64,000 nucleotides of DNA from Dendrobates tinctorius. Its lineage: Eukaryota. The stretch spans positions 36,766,001-36,830,000 of the forward strand of contig NW_027361679.1 of NCBI RefSeq assembly GCF_039654945.1, in the 5' to 3' direction. Under the pieces are notes generated by a model. The model saw only the letters and a program-made list of their open reading frames with translations. It did not search any database and was not told where the DNA came from. Below are positions 40,266 to 47,983 of this stretch, one piece after another. The stretch's first letter is position 1, and the number at the start of each line of letters is the position of its first letter. Both the position numbers and the translations under genes were made by a program.

Positions 40266-40999
40266 AAGATTGGCCAAGATATATCTGAAGACAGGTTTTT
40301 CAAAGGTTCTATGGAACGGTGAGATGAGAGTGACTCTTGACAGCTGAGCTGTGGAGCCGGTAAGCCAAACCTCCGACTCCTCAATTTTCTTGACTCCCGA
40401 CGCCGAGTCCCCAGTACTACCTCACTACTGAGCATGTACATGACATGCAGCACAGACTTATCTCAGCTAAAAGCCGAGATCCTTACATCAGGAACAGACC
40501 TTTATAGGACAATTCATAACTTTCCAAAATTCTTATGAAAAGATATACAGCACATCCTGCATTGTACTACTGCACCCAATTTATTATATATTTTAGGAGT
40601 CTGAGTCGGTACATTCTATACAGATTCCACATCCTTGCCTGACAGACCAGACGGACTGGCCAGTGGCTGGATCAGTAATGGTCACAGACCTCCACTTCAA
40701 CTTGGACACCTGCAAGGTGGAGGTGGAATATTGCTACAAACTAGTATTATTAACGATGAGCTTGTTGGACCTTTCATCAAGGCATCAGGAATTCACTCAC
40801 CTGTGCAACACTATAGAAATCCTGAAAACATGACCTGTGGGAGGCCGTGAGGGCTGTAATTTGGGAAACATTGCTCCAATGAACGGGATATTAGTCGCCA
40901 TTACAATCATTAAAATTGTGCTAAACTACATAAAAGATATTTGACATGCCTTGCCACCAAGTGTTTGATCATATTGGATAGTATAGCAAATAACACTTA

Positions 41000-41918: not shown

Positions 41919-42129
41919 TAAATAAGAGGTTATGTTTTCCTGATGAATAATCGTGTATAGACCAAGGGCGTACTCTGGAGACACAGAGCAGGAAAATCAG
42001 GCTAGCTACATGGGACACAAGGGTCTGCTTGCACAATAAAAGAGCATTACACAATGAAAGGCCCTGAAGACCCTGCATTATTTGGACAATAGGTAAAGTG
42101 CTCCAGTCTGACAACTCTGCCCCTGGTAA

Positions 42130-42714
42130 GGCCTTTTTCAAATTTCCGTTTGTTGCCTGTCAAAATCCGCCGTTTTGCAAAAAAAAAAACGGATCAGCCA
42201 TTTTTTTTGGCGGATCCGTTTTTTTTCTCATTGACTTGCATTAACGGCGGATTTTGACGGATGGTCATCCATTGGATCAGTTTTTTGATGGATCCGCCAT
42301 AATTTTGGCGTCCGCTGACTTCAGTGGACGGACACTGAAATGTTTTGTCTGCGTCACAATAGTGGATACCAACGGATCCGCCGCTATCCGCCATTCGTTA
42401 TAATGGTCGCCTATGGGCGGTGGAACCGTTGCCAACCGTTTATTGATGGAATCTGGCAACGGATCCGCTTTATGACATTGAGCATGCCCGGAATAATTCT
42501 CTTGCCAGAAATTTAACCCCAAATCTCTCTCTCTCCCCCCTTTTATTTTTTCCAGAGTCGTGTTCCTTTAAAATTCCACCACTAGCTGATAATGCGGATC
42601 CATCAAAGAAACGGATCCAGTGGCCTCAGTTTGTGCCACAACGGAAACAGACCCGTTTTTTCACATTCTGACAGATTTCAACTGATGTCAAAAAACTCAA
42701 GTGTGAAACAGGCC
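42130..42714. mobile_element. Harbinger-type MITE with GGATCCG repeats
   Basis: TAA|ggcctttttca...gtgtgaaacaggcc|TAA. A second small MITE follows at 42718-42820. Confidence 0.8.
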
Positions 42715-43652
42715 TAAGCCCTCCTTCACATGTCTCTGCTTAAACGCATACGTGAAAAAACAGCTCTGGTAAAAAAGAAACGGATACCACACAATGGAAA
42801 CACAGACGTGTGATGGGGCCTAACTTCCAGTATAGAACAGTTATCCGCCGTGGGCTGATGGGCTTAAAGAGGAAGTACCTTCCCTTAGATAATTTAACTA
42901 ACACTGTCATCTCATACTTAAGGGGTTAAATAGCTATGATCAGTTCTAACATTAATCATGGTTGTTGCAGCACTGTCAGCTATGATGTATAGCTGCCACC
43001 TGCTGATGGTTACAGTGTGATTGTGAACCGGCGAATTCATTGTGGCGTACATGTACGGCCATTTGTGGGAGACCACATCCCACTGCGCCGTACATGTACA
43101 GCAAATGTCAGGAAGGGGTTAAAAAAAAAAAATTCACCCACTACCAGCGACTACATACTGCTCTCTGACACACTGCTTTGGCCTGCTCTGCAGTGCAATT
43201 AGCGGCAGATGGGCCGTGTGTTTGAGACCACTGCCACAGATGAAATGTCACCGATGTTGCAGCATGCTTTATGCTACTTTCACACATCAGGTTTTCGGCG
43301 TCAGGCGCGATCCGGCGTCGTGCCGGAATGCCGGATCCGGCAAATGTTTTGTAAAACCTGAAGTGCCGGATCCGGTTTTCTGCCGGATCCGTCTTGTTCT
43401 TGACAGACAAAACCGGATCCGTCTCATCCGGTTCATCCGTTTTTCGACGGATTACGCCGGATCCGGTTTTTAAAATTGACCCTTGTGGCCTTCCGAACGG
43501 GATTGGCTACTGGAAAACTAGATATAGCATGTTCCTACAGCCCTTCTTTGACAGGTTGTAGAGAAGAAAGTGCAGGTTGGAGAGAAGAGCAAGTTACTGG
43601 CGAAGATTGATGTTGTCATTGGAAATATTACCACTAGAAGTTCTGTGACGGT

Positions 43653-43721
43653 TTCAGGGACAATTTTCCACTATACTTTATGTCACCTCAAGGCAGAGTA
43701 CACTGGGATGACAGAGTGTGA
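43653..43721 (+). pseudogene. Harbinger transposase C-terminal stub
   Basis: FRDNFPLYFMSPQGRVHWDDRV* resembles the RD.F..YF.S..G.V.W end of Harbinger transposases. Convergent with the MADF gene. Confidence 0.65.
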
Positions 43722-44213
43722 AAGATTTGTGCCCTAAACTTGTGTACCTTCTGGACCAACAGTATATACCTTTGCCAACCAAAGTTGGCTATCTTGTCAT
43801 GGTCTTACTATTTTTACCTTTAGGCCACAGGTGTGTACCTGGTTGTGTTTTATGCAAAGTATTTCACCTTTTAACAAAAGTTGTGTACATTGGTAGGAAA
43901 TCACCAACAATAAACACAACTTTTTAGGTGAAATACTTTGCTTCAAACACAACCAGGAACACAACTGTGGCAAAAAGCTAAAATTTACCCACAGTTATAT
44001 ACCTGGTTTTGAATACCTTTTTACCTTTGAAATACCCTGCATTTAACCTTTTTTTAAAACATAGTTCGCCGCAGAAAGAAATGACAGACAACCATTGTGA
44101 AACGATAATTTAACTTTTATTTAAATTTTTTTTTTGTTTGTTTTTAAAGTGCAAAAAACTTTTTTAATAAAGGTTTTAAACCCAATGGGCATTTTTATTA
44201 CAACAAAAAAACA

Positions 44214-46864
44214 TTACAAATCTGTGTACTGTGGGGTGGAAATACTGCTGGAGGGGCTGCGGGACACTTCTACACTGGGTGTGTGGAGAGAGGACTGGGA
44301 TCGTGGTGGGGAAGGAACAGTTAGAGGTGAAGGTGTGGAAAAAGCTACAGAATGGGTGGACATGTGGGAGGCAGAAGAGGTGGTGGGCGGTGGAGTGGAG
44401 GGTTGGGCATGGACTGTAGGAGCAGATGATGTTGATGGAAAGTTGTATGGGGAAGGAGTTTGGTACGGGGAAGGAGTTTGGTACGGGGAAGGAGTTTGGT
44501 ACGGGGAAGGAGTTTGGTACGGGGAAGGAGTTTGGTACGGGGAAGGAGTTTGGTACGGGGAAGGAGTTTGGTACGGGGAAGGAGTTTGGTACGGGGAAGG
44601 AGTTTGGTACGGGGAAGGAGTTTGGTACGGGGAAGGAGTTTGGTACGGGGCAGGTTGCTGGAAGTGGGGAGATGTCTGGTACTGGTGAGGTTGCTGGTAT
44701 GTAATAGGAGGGGGAGGATGGAAAGTGGCTGGAGGGGGTGCAGATGTAATAGGAGGGGGAGGATGGAAAGTGGCTGGAGGGGGTGCAGGTGGAGGAACTA
44801 CAGTGGTGGGAGGTGGAGGTTGGGAGGTAACCTGCTGTAGAGCACCGTGGCACGAATGCATTACATGCATCTGCTGGGTAGGAGATAGTGTTGCCATGCA
44901 CTCCACAACAGACCTGAAAAAGGTGTGGTTTGGCGAAGATCTTGCTTCTGAATGCATGGTTTGCAGAAGTGTCTTCACCTCCAGAATGCTGGAGTTGATC
45001 TGCTGAAAGCCTGCGGAGATTTGCTCTGACAAGACTTTGAGACAGTTCTGGAAAGATGCATTCAGATGCAATAACTCTTGCGCATAACTCTTTTCCTGAC
45101 CCCTCTGCCGCTGCCGCCCAGTACCCGCAGGTGTACTAGAGGCGGCAGGGGCAGAAGGGTGGGGTAAAGGGAAAGCGATCTCCTCACCAGCAGCTTCATG
45201 TAATGTAGGCAGCCACGATGCTCCTGTGCTGGTGGATGGGACAGATGGGTCGAATGTGTGGGAAGGCTGGGAAGGTGCAGATGTACCGGGGCGGTCGAAG
45301 TGTCCCTCGGTGCCGGTCTCCTCAGGGATCGCCTCAGAAGGGTCCAATCGTGCAGGCTCCCGAGTGCTGCTCACCGTGCTGTGTAATAAAGAGAAAAAAA
45401 AACAATTAAAATACTGACATGGTATGGCCCTGGCTGAAAAAAAAAAGTTACATCTAACATTTTTTTCACATGTGGTGTGTAATATTTACCTTCTGGTGAG
45501 CATTGTTTCCCGGAGGAACGACAGGGCTTTTGCGTACTTGTACTTGCTCCTGCGTCCTCCAGATCCACTCGGGGCCCGCATCTCTTTATTGAACTCCTTC
45601 TTGAAACGATCCCTCACAGACCGCCACTGATTCACAATTCTGTTCCCTGAAACGAGAAAGGAGTGGTTAGTATACAACATCAGTGTTTCACAAACTCCAG
45701 TCCTCATGGTCCCCAGGGGTCATGTTTTCAGGATTTCCATAGTAAATAGAAATCCTGAACACATGATCCGTGGGGACCACGAGGACTGGAGTTCGGGAAA
45801 CACTGGTTTACATCAAGCAACCGGTACTGTATATACTTACGCTCTTTAATCTGGGCCCGAGCTTCGAGGTCCTCCCAGCGGCCCACAAGGAGAGAACAGA
45901 TTTCCTCCCAGAGTCGTCGGGTAATGATCAGGTCAGCGTGGCGGCGGTCAGCCATATTCCAGAGCGGCTCCCTTTCTCTGACGAGATCGATGAGGCGGTC
46001 CACATCAATCCCTCCATCCTCACCGTCAGAGTCGGGAGCACGCTGTGAAGGCTGTTAAAGAAAAAGACAAAAATAACATAATTAGCCTCCACAAAAGAAA
46101 TGAAATAAAAAGTGCAAAAAAACAAAGCAAAAATATTTATACTTACACGCTGGTGACCGCCGCGTTGCTGTCGCCGACGACCCTGGGAGGCACTGCGAGG
46201 ACCTCTTGGCCGAGCACCAGATTGGGAAGACTAGAGAAGAAAACAAAAAATGTTATGTCTTTGGATGTAGGCATTTGTTTGCTGTGTGTGGTCTGCAGAA
46301 CATTGTTTTCTATGTGTTGTGTGTAGTGTGATGTTGTGTTTCTGCGTTTGATGCAAAAAACTTACCAATTGTGAGCCCACTCCAGGTGTCTGTCCACCCC
46401 TTCCTTCTTCTTCTGGGAGCTCCTCTTCATCTTGTGATTCCTGTTTTGAAATAAAAGGCAATGAATAGACATATATTACAGAGATGATGGATTTTGGAAA
46501 TAAAAACTTACCGTCAAACGCTGACGATGCGAGGGAGGGCTCCCAGAAGAAGATGTGCTGTCCTGTTGATGGCCAGACTCCATGGCTGTGGGTATTGCTG
46601 CTGCCAGTGATGCCATTTCTGCTGCTGCTGCTGCTGCATCTCTTTGGCGGCTGTTGAATAAAGAGAAACAAAGGGCCAATGAATATCTTGATATTCCATG
46701 GCCCTAGTTTGGAGGAATGGGGGATTTGATAATTACCGTCTCTCATCTGCTTCTGGACTCCCCTCCCGTTCAGCATGCTGCTCCATTTGGGGTGGTGCTG
46801 ATGGTGCTGCTGCTGCAGATGTCTGCTGCCTTCTCCTGCTCCTGGTTCTTGGCTTGGGTGGCAT
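44214..46864 (-). CDS. Predicted 7-exon, 652-aa MADF (Myb/SANT-like) and BESS-like protein. Exons 46737-46864, 46512-46650, 46366-46440, 46147-46230, 45841-46051, 45490-45646, 44214-45378
   Basis: All six introns are GT-AG with pyrimidine tracts and matching phases (2,0,0,0,1,2), with no internal stop. MADF: IDVDRLIDLVREREPLWN...LWEEIC...WRSVRDRF...YKYAKALSFL. BESS-like: PNHTFFRSVVECMATLSPTQQMHVMHSCHGAL. AATAAA near 44194 and 44116. The start codon is less certain than the domains. Confidence 0.85.
44449..44650 (-). repeat. Coding 18-bp tandem repeat, 11 perfect copies, encoding (PYQTPS)n
   Basis: Plus strand ggggaaggagtttggtac x11, inside the last exon. Confidence 0.95.
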
Positions 46865-46895
46865 GTTGGGTGTGGCTGAGGGTCCCATTGTCTTG

Positions 46896-46905
46896 CTTTT
46901 ATATA
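46896..46905 (-). promoter_or_regulatory. Candidate TATA box of the MADF-BESS gene
   Basis: Minus strand TATATAAAAG about 32-41 nt upstream of the ATG at 46864. Confidence 0.5.
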
Positions 46906-47983
46906 TCTCCTGTGGGCAGAGCTACTGAGCATGCTCAGACCAAAAAAACCGGATCCGGCGCATTGCGGCGCTCATAGGCTTTCATTGTGTGAAAAAGCCG
47001 GACGCGCCGGATCTGGCGGGTACGGCTTTTTCGCCGGAGACAAAAAACGTTACAGTAGACGTTTTTTCCAGACGCCGGATCGCGACACATTGCGACACAT
47101 TGCCGGATCCGGCGAAAACCGGATGAAACGCATGGCCATCCGGCGCGATCCGGCGCAAATGCAAGTCAATGGGGGGGAAACCGGATCCGGCATTGCATTT
47201 CGCCGGATCCGGTTTCTGTCAAAAGTGCCGGATCGCACCTGACGGCGAAAACCTGATGTGTGAAAGAGGCCTTACACACTTCTAAATAATCACCACTTGC
47301 TATGATTTGCGATACTGTGAAAGAACAGATTTTCATGTCTGTGATAGGTGCAGGTATGTAGGATTAGACCCTTTCTTGTTCCATGACTTGAAATCACCTT
47401 GCTCAAACCTACTGATTTCCTATTAATATCAGTATTTAGAAATATAAAGCAGTTTTATCGAAAAAATGCTTGACTAATACTGGGCTGCCATTAGGGAAGT
47501 TCAGCAGCTGAGTGTCGGCTCAAAATATCTGCAGTTTTGCAAATTTCAGGATGTGATGACTGATTGACAATCACACGCCACATAAAGAAAACTTCTGTGT
47601 CTAGAGCTTCAGTTTCTAAGGTCTGAGAAAATGACTCTTCCCCACACATACTGGCATCAGATTGTAAAAACGTCTATGCAGCACTAAAAGTAGACGACTG
47701 AAGGCGACCAGCACATTTACAGAAATCCGAGCAATTTATGCTGCAAATCTGCACACAGACAACCCATCTTACTAACACCGGTCTTGATAAATTCCCCCCA
47801 TAACACTTATATAATCTTTGATTGATGCAGAGCCGAAGATAATGTATTCTTCGACAGAAATTTCAGGCCGACTACGATGTCTATTCAATGGGATGATTAC
47901 CAAAAAGTTTATAGGTCTAATAGGGAATGTGCCAAGCCAGCGTAAGAAGACTTAAAGGCCGTGCAATTCCTCTGGGAATTTAA

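What the first reader, a model, noticed from the sequence alone, without database searches (positions are those of the whole stretch)
43272..47271. Transposase-less Harbinger retaining an intact 7-exon MADF-BESS gene
Seen: TIRs and TTA TSD; only a ~22-codon transposase C-terminal stub on the plus strand; and a convergent gene with TATA-like box, six phase-matched GT-AG introns, a 652-codon uninterrupted frame and poly(A) signals. Established: autonomous Harbingers encode a DDE transposase plus a Myb/SANT-like protein that binds subterminal repeats, and such genes have been domesticated (HARBI1/NAIF1). Inference: this could be a Myb-only lineage that borrows transposase in trans and supplies or competes for the DNA-binding subunit, or an early domestication. 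Intactness could also simply reflect recent insertion.
Basis: partly seen in the sequence, partly recalled or inferred. Interest (0 to 1): 0.85.

Follow-up and report, generated by a model that had tools for sequence, protein, structure and literature searches.

The report
Transposase-less Harbinger keeping its MADF gene
This is a 4-kb jumping gene of the Harbinger type in a poison-frog genome that has lost its cutting enzyme but still carries an unbroken gene for its DNA-binding partner protein. It looks like one of many young copies drifting neutrally, a kind of element already described in a nematode in 2026.

Summary
The element spans 43272-47271, with 40-nt inverted ends, a TTA duplication on both sides, and ten CCGGATCCGG-type motifs (seven exact, three with one mismatch) found only in its two ends. 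On the minus strand is a 7-exon GT-AG gene with matching phases: 660 codons, or 652 from the second ATG. It encodes a complete MADF domain split by intron 5. RefSeq protein models of paralogues align across all six junctions. No transposase domain remains.

Two claims are not confirmed. The "22-codon transposase stub" gave no match in any search. BESS scores below Pfam's cut-off (13.4 vs 21 bits) but recurs at the same site in relatives.

The gene belongs to a dispersed family found almost only in dendrobatoid frogs, with about 15 or more Dendrobates tinctorius loci. Amino-acid changes private to single copies, this one included, hit conserved and variable positions equally. That indicates neutral decay, not domestication.

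The best reading is a young non-autonomous deletion derivative that depends on transposase supplied in trans. MADF-bearing, DDE-less Harbinger derivatives were published for Caenorhabditis inopinata (PMC13668399).

This scan's first readers noted five other ~3.9-4.2-kb "transposase-less, intact MADF" elements on other DNA of this genome. These are unchecked leads that the form is multi-copy. I could not fetch DNA of other copies.

The parts
43269..43271 (.). Left target-site duplication TTA
   Evidence: Read. Matches TTA at 47272-47274.
43272..43316 (+). Left terminal inverted repeat. 43277-43316 pairs with the right end. The outermost 5 nt read TGCTA instead of GGCCT.
   Evidence: (pair I3, 40 nt, 95%).
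43317..43470 (.). Left subterminal zone with five CCGGATCCGG-type palindromes (43331, 43366, 43383, 43413, 43457). Presumed binding sites of the MADF protein.
   Evidence: CpG o/e 1.62 against 0.5-0.66 in the flanks. Binding is inferred.
43471..44213 (.). Non-coding remainder where a transposase gene would lie in a two-gene element.
   Evidence: No Pfam family in any open frame here. No DDE hallmark motifs. phmmer of the stub frame found 0 hits. Palindrome I2.
44214..45378 (-). Exon 7 (includes stop TAA at 44214-44216). It encodes a linker, a conserved helical/BESS-like region and a Pro-rich repeat tail.
   Evidence: Homologues.
44862..44921 (-). BESS-like motif (spliced residues 426-445)
   Evidence: Pfam BESS 13.4 bits, below the 21 cut-off. 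The same site scores in P0049, P0023 and P0034. hhalign to the true BESS of Hyla sarda P0072 gives prob 53%, E 1.4e-4.
44445..44654 (-). 18-nt tandem repeat x 11.7 encoding (PSPYQT)n. A perfect 45-nt duplication follows at 44699-44788.
   Evidence: Paralogues differ here by 48-73-residue gaps.
45490..45646 (-). Exon 6: C-terminal half of the MADF domain
   Evidence: profile 41-84, 26.6 bits.
45681..45805 (.). 125-nt palindrome inside intron 5, the intron that splits the MADF domain
   Evidence: I1, 60-nt arms, 88%. A relative lies at 40810-40873. Rfam gives only far-sub-threshold hits.
45841..46051 (-). Exon 5: N-terminal half of the MADF domain
   Evidence: profile 1-50, 19 bits.
46147..46230 (-). 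Exon 4
   Evidence: Junctions supported by ungapped alignment to P0046/P0002.
46366..46440 (-). Exon 3
46512..46650 (-). Exon 2
   Evidence: P0049 aligns over residues 1-660.
46737..46888 (-). Exon 1 (first ATG at 46888, second ATG at 46864)
46896..46905 (-). TATA-like box TATATAAAAG
   Evidence: Function inferred.
46936..47226 (.). Right subterminal zone with five CCGGATCCGG-type palindromes (46949, 47007, 47103, 47181, 47203)
   Evidence: CpG o/e 1.36.
47227..47271 (-). Right terminal inverted repeat, ending in the canonical ...GTGTGAAAGAGGCC
47272..47274 (.). Right target-site duplication TTA

Best explanation
The feature is a non-autonomous internal-deletion derivative of a two-gene PIF/Harbinger DNA transposon family of dendrobatid poison frogs. 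The genome is probably Dendrobates tinctorius.

The element keeps the cis parts: the TIRs and 5 + 5 CCGGATCCGG-type subterminal motifs. It also keeps the complete gene for the family's MADF (BESS-like) DNA-binding subunit, with its own TATA box and poly(A) signal. It has no transposase gene.

It inserted at a TTA, presumably using DDE transposase made by an autonomous relative (inferred). If its gene is transcribed, it would add MADF protein to the common pool that binds the subterminal motifs (inferred from Harbinger3_DR and Pong biology).

The gene is intact because the copy is young, not because the host or the element selects for it. Individual copies of this family, this one included, accumulate amino-acid changes without regard to conservation.
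For: Structure:
- TIRs, TTA TSD and end-restricted palindromes.
- A neighbouring 585-bp MITE (42130-42714) with TAA|GGCCT termini and related motifs shows that this kind of element is mobile in this genome.
- The 7-exon gene is intact and carries MADF.
- RefSeq models of paralogues are collinear across every junction.
- No DDE domain or motif anywhere in the element.

Dispersed family:
- About 18 D. tinctorius proteins of 86-96% identity, on scaffolds with different neighbour genes.
- In the tree the window copy sits inside a star-like D. tinctorius-only clade.

Neutral decay:
- Copy-private changes number 30 at 163 deep-conserved columns and 39 at 207 variable columns, a per-site ratio of 0.98.
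- The window copy has 3 and 4. Its private changes include R227Q in the third MADF helix and F375L at an invariant column.
- In a cruder first pass, conserved columns were less often variable within the young clade (42/127 vs 78/158, p 0.008), while singleton columns alone were not depleted (31/127 vs 44/158). This suggests constraint acting on shared, older changes rather than on copy-private ones.

Precedent for DDE-less, MADF-bearing Harbinger derivatives: PMC13668399.
Against: - No autonomous partner was seen by me. The link to a DDE transposase rests on the TWA TSD, the MADF gene and unchecked scan notes.
- The claimed transposase stub could not be verified.
- The selection test uses proteins only, and only annotated (hence mostly open) gene models. 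It has few events for the window copy itself (7).
- With about 1.9% private amino-acid change, a rough estimate gives only about a 1-in-10 chance that a 2-kb frame stays open by luck. Five further first-reader notes of intact MADF genes in ~4-kb elements could mean more than luck.
- Three of the five outermost bases of the left end are non-canonical, which remains unexplained.
Confidence: 0.62

Rival explanations
1. This is a half-autonomous MADF-only lineage. On this reading the ~4-kb form is a self-sustaining subfamily that has split the two Harbinger functions between separate elements. It supplies its own DNA-binding subunit and borrows only the DDE enzyme, as proposed for Harbinger-1M_cIno. 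Keeping the MADF gene would then help the subfamily spread, for example through preferential binding of a matched MADF variant to its own end motifs, or by competing with autonomous elements.
For: - Five other first-reader notes in the same genome describe 3.92-4.16-kb transposase-less Harbingers with intact 7- or 8-exon MADF genes (unchecked).
- None of six paralogue loci looked up in three species has an annotated DDE gene within 7-10 kb.
- Conserved columns vary less often than variable ones within the young clade, while singleton columns are not depleted.
- A published precedent exists.
Against: - Private changes per copy are neutral.
- Proteins act in trans, so no mechanism is shown that would favour an element carrying its own MADF gene.
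- A short deletion derivative can amplify passively.
- Annotation pipelines often omit transposases, so a missing neighbour gene is weak evidence.
- A shared deletion breakpoint was not tested.
Confidence: 0.3
2. This is an early domesticated host gene: a Harbinger-derived MADF-BESS transcription factor, like NAIF1 or the insect PIF-derived MADF genes, now serving the frog.
For: - The frame is intact, with its own promoter-like and poly(A) signals.
- RefSeq models some paralogues with several isoforms.
- Some models join MADF exons to KRAB/zinc-finger genes.
Against: - TIRs and TSD are still present.
- There are many near-identical paralogues at unrelated loci.
- This locus itself has no identical protein in the database (best 96%).
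- Private substitutions fall at conserved positions at the neutral rate.
Confidence: 0.03
3. This is not a single element: a MADF gene fragment that happens to lie between two independent Harbinger MITE ends, or a cargo gene picked up by another superfamily.
For: - The left terminus is non-canonical in its outer 5 nt.
- A separate Harbinger MITE lies only 558 bp away.
Against: - The two ends are 95% matched over 40 nt and carry the same motif in equal numbers.
- TTA flanks both ends at the same offset.
- The gene's promoter abuts the right subterminal zone.
- The MADF family is dispersed like a transposon gene.
Confidence: 0.05

Closest known systems
Harbinger-1M_cIno family of Caenorhabditis inopinata (Sato et al. 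2026, Genome Biol Evol, PMC13668399)
   Same: A PIF/Harbinger derivative with TWA TSD and long retained terminal regions. It keeps an intact MADF gene but has no DDE transposase ORF. The DDE function is presumed to be supplied in trans.
   Different: The host here is a vertebrate and the element is 4.0 kb rather than 1.63 kb. The gene has 7 exons, a BESS-like motif and a long Pro-rich repeat tail. Copy number, a DDE source and recent mobility were shown in the nematode but not here.
Canonical two-gene Harbinger elements (Harbinger3_DR of zebrafish; Ping/Pong of rice) and their non-autonomous derivatives (Tourist MITEs, mPing)
   Same: 3-bp TTA/TAA duplication, GGCC-type terminus, subterminal repeats bound by a Myb/SANT/MADF-like second protein, and mobilisation of deletion derivatives in trans. 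This rests on established knowledge, as cited in PMC13668399.
   Different: Typical derivatives lose both genes. This one lost only the transposase.
Domesticated Harbinger partners (HARBI1/NAIF1; insect PIF-derived MADF genes, PMC9710019)
   Same: A Harbinger-derived Myb/MADF-type DNA-binding protein.
   Different: Those genes are single-copy, lack transposon ends and are under purifying selection. This gene lies between TIRs, is one of many copies and drifts neutrally.
MADF-BESS transcription factors (Adf-1, Dip3; Hyla sarda P0072)
   Same: The MADF domain scores 43-52 bits in full-length paralogues. A BESS-like helix lies about 160 residues downstream, the same spacing as in P0072.
   Different: BESS is below Pfam's threshold in this family. 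Outside MADF there is no BLAST similarity to P0072.

Membership tests
PIF/Harbinger superfamily | 3-bp target-site duplication TWA | tested here: met
   TTA at 43269-43271 and 47272-47274. The neighbouring related MITE has TAA on both sides.
PIF/Harbinger superfamily | Terminal inverted repeats, typically starting GGCC/GGGC | tested here: met
   40-nt TIR at 95%. The right end starts GGCCT. The left end's outer 5 nt read TGCTA.
PIF/Harbinger superfamily | PIF-type DDE transposase (Pfam DDE_Tnp_4 or Plant_tran) | tested here: not met
   No Pfam hit in any open frame of the element. No hallmark motifs in the whole window. The copy can therefore only be a non-autonomous member.
PIF/Harbinger superfamily | Second gene for a Myb/SANT/MADF-like DNA-binding protein | tested here: met
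   MADF halves in exons 5 and 6. Paralogues score 43-52 bits over profile 1-84.
PIF/Harbinger superfamily | Sequence continuity with an autonomous element carrying the same ends | not testable with these tools
There are only unchecked scan notes of complete two-gene copies.
MADF-only Harbinger derivative lineage (as Harbinger-1M_cIno) | Element retains an intact MADF gene and lacks a DDE ORF | tested here: met
MADF-only Harbinger derivative lineage (as Harbinger-1M_cIno) | Several copies share the same transposase-less structure and breakpoint | not testable with these tools
   Five first-reader notes of 3.92-4.16-kb look-alikes are leads only. A sequence look-up in the scan index was blank.
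MADF-only Harbinger derivative lineage (as Harbinger-1M_cIno) | An intact DDE source elsewhere in the genome, and evidence of recent movement | not tested
   No transposase sequence could be obtained. The stub search was blank.
MADF-BESS protein family | MADF domain above the Pfam threshold | tested here: met
   The exon-6 half alone scores 26.6 bits against a cut-off of 22. Paralogue P0049 scores 43 bits.
MADF-BESS protein family | BESS motif above the Pfam threshold | tested here: inconclusive
   13.4 bits against a cut-off of 21. The hit recurs at the homologous site in 3 relatives. hhalign to a true BESS gives prob 53%.
Domesticated transposon-derived gene | Loss of transposon ends, fixed single locus, purifying selection on the copy | tested here: not met
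   TIRs and TSD are present. There are about 15 or more paralogous loci. Private changes are neutral with respect to conservation.

The most novel reading that the evidence does not exclude
The ~4-kb form is an amplifying, half-autonomous Harbinger subfamily in a vertebrate. It would have physically separated the DNA-binding (MADF) function from the catalytic (DDE) function, keeping its own MADF gene open across many copies. This would be a second, independent case of the functional partition proposed for C. inopinata. It would be directly testable in the giant, TE-rich poison-frog genomes.
Probability: 0.3. Interest if true: 0.5.

Novelty: new member of a known kind. Interest (0 to 1): 0.3.

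Why it matters
Harbinger transposition needs two proteins, so the family can decay asymmetrically. If MADF-only elements really amplify in poison frogs, they would give a vertebrate system for three questions. How do two-component transposons divide labour? How do surplus DNA-binding subunits affect transposition, as helper or competitor? How do Harbinger Myb/MADF genes become raw material for host genes? On the last point, some RefSeq models already join these MADF exons to KRAB zinc-finger genes. As it stands, this single copy is an ordinary, well-preserved deletion derivative.

Tried and rejected
- Fetching DNA of paralogous loci. The look-up of encoding contigs returned gene tables but no DNA at seven loci, because the assemblies are too large. 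P0002 was not on record. Breakpoint sharing, nucleotide dN/dS and the empty-site test were therefore impossible.
- Scanning metagenome contigs for the 20-nt TIR core. The two hits (L001, L002) are one unrelated AT-rich sequence that shares only the 20-mer.
- Verifying the transposase stub. The three plus-strand frames gave no Pfam hits. phmmer of the 44-residue frame against 1.84 billion representatives gave 0 hits. This is a low-power search, so the blank does not disprove the stub.
- A regex scan of all six frames of the window for DDE hallmark motifs found nothing relevant.
- Rfam on the element gave only far-sub-threshold miRNA-like matches to the palindromes.
- BLAST of the window protein against the Hyla MADF-BESS protein found similarity in MADF only. 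A profile comparison was needed for the BESS region.
- A scan-index look-up by sequence and one by words were blank.
Full report
**What is there**

Reading 42900-47700 and the repeat search show a 4,000-bp unit, 43272-47271. It is bounded by a 40-nt inverted repeat (43277-43316 / 47227-47266, 95% complementary). The 20-nt core of this repeat occurs only at these two places in the 64 kb, against 0.01 expected.

TTA lies directly outside both ends (43269-43271 and 47272-47274).

Inside each end are five copies of a CCGGATCCGG-type palindrome. Seven of the ten are exact, three have one mismatch, and none occurs elsewhere in the window, against 0.6 expected. Both ends are CpG-rich (o/e 1.6 and 1.4), while the flanks are at 0.5-0.66.

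A 585-bp Harbinger-type MITE lies 558 bp to the left, at 42130-42714. It reads TAA|GGCCTTTTTCA...TGAAACAGGCC|TAA and carries related CGGATCCG motifs. This shows the canonical terminus of this group of elements. The finding's right end has that terminus (GGCCTCTTTCACAC). Its left end reads TGCTACTTTCACAC, so three of the five outermost bases differ. I cannot explain this.

**The gene**

On the minus strand I rebuilt the gene from the reading frames and splice signals. The exons are:

| Exon | Coordinates |
|---|---|
| 1 | 46888-46737 |
| 2 | 46650-46512 |
| 3 | 46440-46366 |
| 4 | 46230-46147 |
| 5 | 46051-45841 |
| 6 | 45646-45490 |
| 7 | 45378-44214 |

- All six introns are GT-AG, with GTAAGT-like donors and pyrimidine-rich acceptors, and all phases match.
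- The frame has 660 codons from the first ATG.
- TATATAAAAG (46905-46896) lies only 8-17 nt upstream of that ATG, so the second ATG (46864) is the likelier start.
- AATAAA follows the stop at 44194-44199.
- Pfam finds MADF_DNA_bdg in two halves, exon 5 (profile 1-50) and exon 6 (profile 41-84). Intron 5 therefore splits the domain.

The model is independently supported by RefSeq proteins of paralogues. P0046 and P0002 align without gaps over residues 74-468, and P0049 (601 aa) aligns over residues 1-660. Full-length paralogues score 43-52 bits over the entire MADF profile.

**BESS**

Pfam does not call BESS at its threshold. A sub-threshold match (13.4 bits, cut-off 21) sits at spliced residues 426-445 (44862-44921). 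It recurs at the homologous position in P0049, P0023 and P0034. This stretch is among the most conserved of the family (alignment A1).

The nearest relative outside the poison frogs is Hyla sarda P0072. It has a true MADF plus BESS (32 bits) with the same ~160-residue spacing. A profile comparison aligns the family's motif to that BESS with probability 53%, E 1.4e-4. Plain BLAST finds only the MADF similarity. My reading is BESS-like: probable but unproven.

**No transposase**

Outside the gene and the ends only 43471-44213 remains. None of its open frames, on either strand, matches any Pfam family. No DDE hallmark motif occurs anywhere in the window.

It has no Pfam match and no match among 1.84 billion representative proteins. 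That search has little power for 22 residues, so the stub is unverified rather than refuted.

**What family it belongs to**

Exon 7 finds 42 proteins, all from dendrobatoid frogs:

| Species | Identity to exon 7 |
|---|---|
| Dendrobates tinctorius | mostly 83-95% (two older lineages at 57% and 73%) |
| Ranitomeya imitator and R. variabilis | 46-70% |
| Anomaloglossus baeobatrachus | 56-64% |

The window is therefore probably D. tinctorius. Cluster listings give about 18 distinct D. tinctorius RefSeq proteins on scaffolds of different size. Different host genes lie around them: GCIP, VWD and CNPase.

In a tree the window copy sits in a star-like D. tinctorius-only clade. Ranitomeya and Anomaloglossus have bursts of their own, and older D. 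tinctorius lineages persist. This is the pattern of a vertically persisting transposon family with lineage-specific bursts.

No database protein is identical to the window's (best 96%). This locus itself therefore seems not to be annotated.

**Selection**

Nucleotide sequences of other copies could not be fetched, because the assemblies are too large for the tool. I used a protein proxy instead.

- Columns were classed as deep-conserved (at least 80% identical among 53 divergent relatives) or variable.
- Changes private to a single young copy fall on both classes alike: 30 at 163 conserved columns and 39 at 207 variable ones, a per-site ratio of 0.98.
- The window copy has 3 and 4. Constraint of omega 0.2 or lower at conserved sites is rejected even for this copy alone (P 0.026), and overwhelmingly so for the pool.
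- The window's private changes include R227Q just before the conserved tryptophan of the third MADF helix, and F375L at an invariant column.
- In a cruder first pass, conserved columns were less often variable within the young clade (42/127 vs 78/158, P 0.008). Singleton columns alone were not depleted (31/127 vs 44/158).

Function thus seems to have mattered for older, shared changes, while inserted copies drift.

Caveats: only annotated, mostly open models were sampled, and "private" depends on that sampling.

**How it most likely works**

Shown: the element has the cis features of a Harbinger and one of the two Harbinger genes.

Inferred from established Harbinger biology, as summarised in PMC13668399 (the Myb/MADF partner binds subterminal repeats and recruits the DDE transposase):
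- It was mobilised by transposase from an autonomous relative.
- Its MADF protein, if made, joins the common pool that binds the CCGGATCCGG motifs.

Its open frame is best explained by youth. It has about 1.9% private amino-acid change, which by a rough estimate leaves roughly a one-in-ten chance of an open 2-kb frame. The scan also preferentially notices open ones.

**Rivals**

The main rival is that the ~4-kb form is a self-propagating MADF-only subfamily. In its favour:
- First readers of this scan noted five other 3.92-4.16-kb "transposase-less Harbinger with intact 7/8-exon MADF gene" elements elsewhere in this genome, along with notes of complete two-gene copies. These are unchecked.
- None of six paralogue loci in three species has an annotated DDE gene within 7-10 kb.

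Against it, a shorter derivative can amplify passively, and no cis-advantage of carrying the gene is shown.

Domestication is very unlikely: the ends and TSD are present, there are many copies, and drift is neutral. A chance pairing of two MITE ends around a gene is also unlikely: the ends match, the motif numbers are equal, and the gene family is dispersed.

**Comparison with the known, and novelty**

The configuration [quoted passage not shown] was published in September 2026 for Caenorhabditis inopinata. There 19 MADF-only elements, one intact DDE locus and a spontaneous insertion were documented. The authors state that it had not been reported before in the superfamily.

The frog element is thus a new member of a known kind, in a vertebrate, with a larger, intron-rich MADF/BESS-like gene. 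It is not a new principle. Interest is modest unless the genome-wide analysis shows a true MADF-only lineage.

Noticed in passing
window 42127-42717: A 585-bp Harbinger-type MITE (TAA|GGCCTTTTTCA...TGAAACAGGCC|TAA) with CGGATCCG-like subterminal motifs, 558 bp left of the finding. Part of it (42208-42299) is 73% similar to the finding's right subterminal zone.
   Followed up: partly
window 43272-43276: The outermost 5 nt of the left end read TGCTA. The right end and both ends of the neighbouring MITE read GGCCT. Three changes in five bases is far more than the ~1% divergence of the rest would predict. The cause is unexplained, and it may affect whether this copy can still be cut.
   Followed up: partly
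window 45681-45805 and 40810-40873: A 125-nt near-perfect palindrome lies in the intron that splits the MADF domain. A relative of about 82% identity lies outside the element. Rfam gives only far-sub-threshold miRNA-like matches. Other scan notes describe arrays of 6-9 such hairpins in this intron in other copies.
   Followed up: partly
window 43812-43983: A second palindrome (58-nt arms, 88%, 56-nt loop) in the non-coding remainder between the left end and the MADF gene's 3' end. It contains a plus-strand AATAAA.
   Followed up: no
window 44445-44788: The array (PSPYQT) x 11, encoded by 18-nt units that are 98% identical, is followed by a perfect 45-nt duplication. Paralogues differ here by 48-73-residue gaps, so the repeat number is unstable between copies.
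   Followed up: partly
proteins P0054, P0071 (D. tinctorius), P0065 (Anomaloglossus): RefSeq/GenBank models join this family's MADF exons to a KRAB box and/or C2H2 zinc-finger arrays. This could be exon capture by KRAB-ZNF genes or an annotation artefact.
   Followed up: no
loci L001:2792-2811 and L002:2449-2468: Two metagenome contigs share the exact 20-nt TIR core but nothing else. They are copies of one unrelated AT-rich sequence, so this is a chance match.
   Followed up: yes
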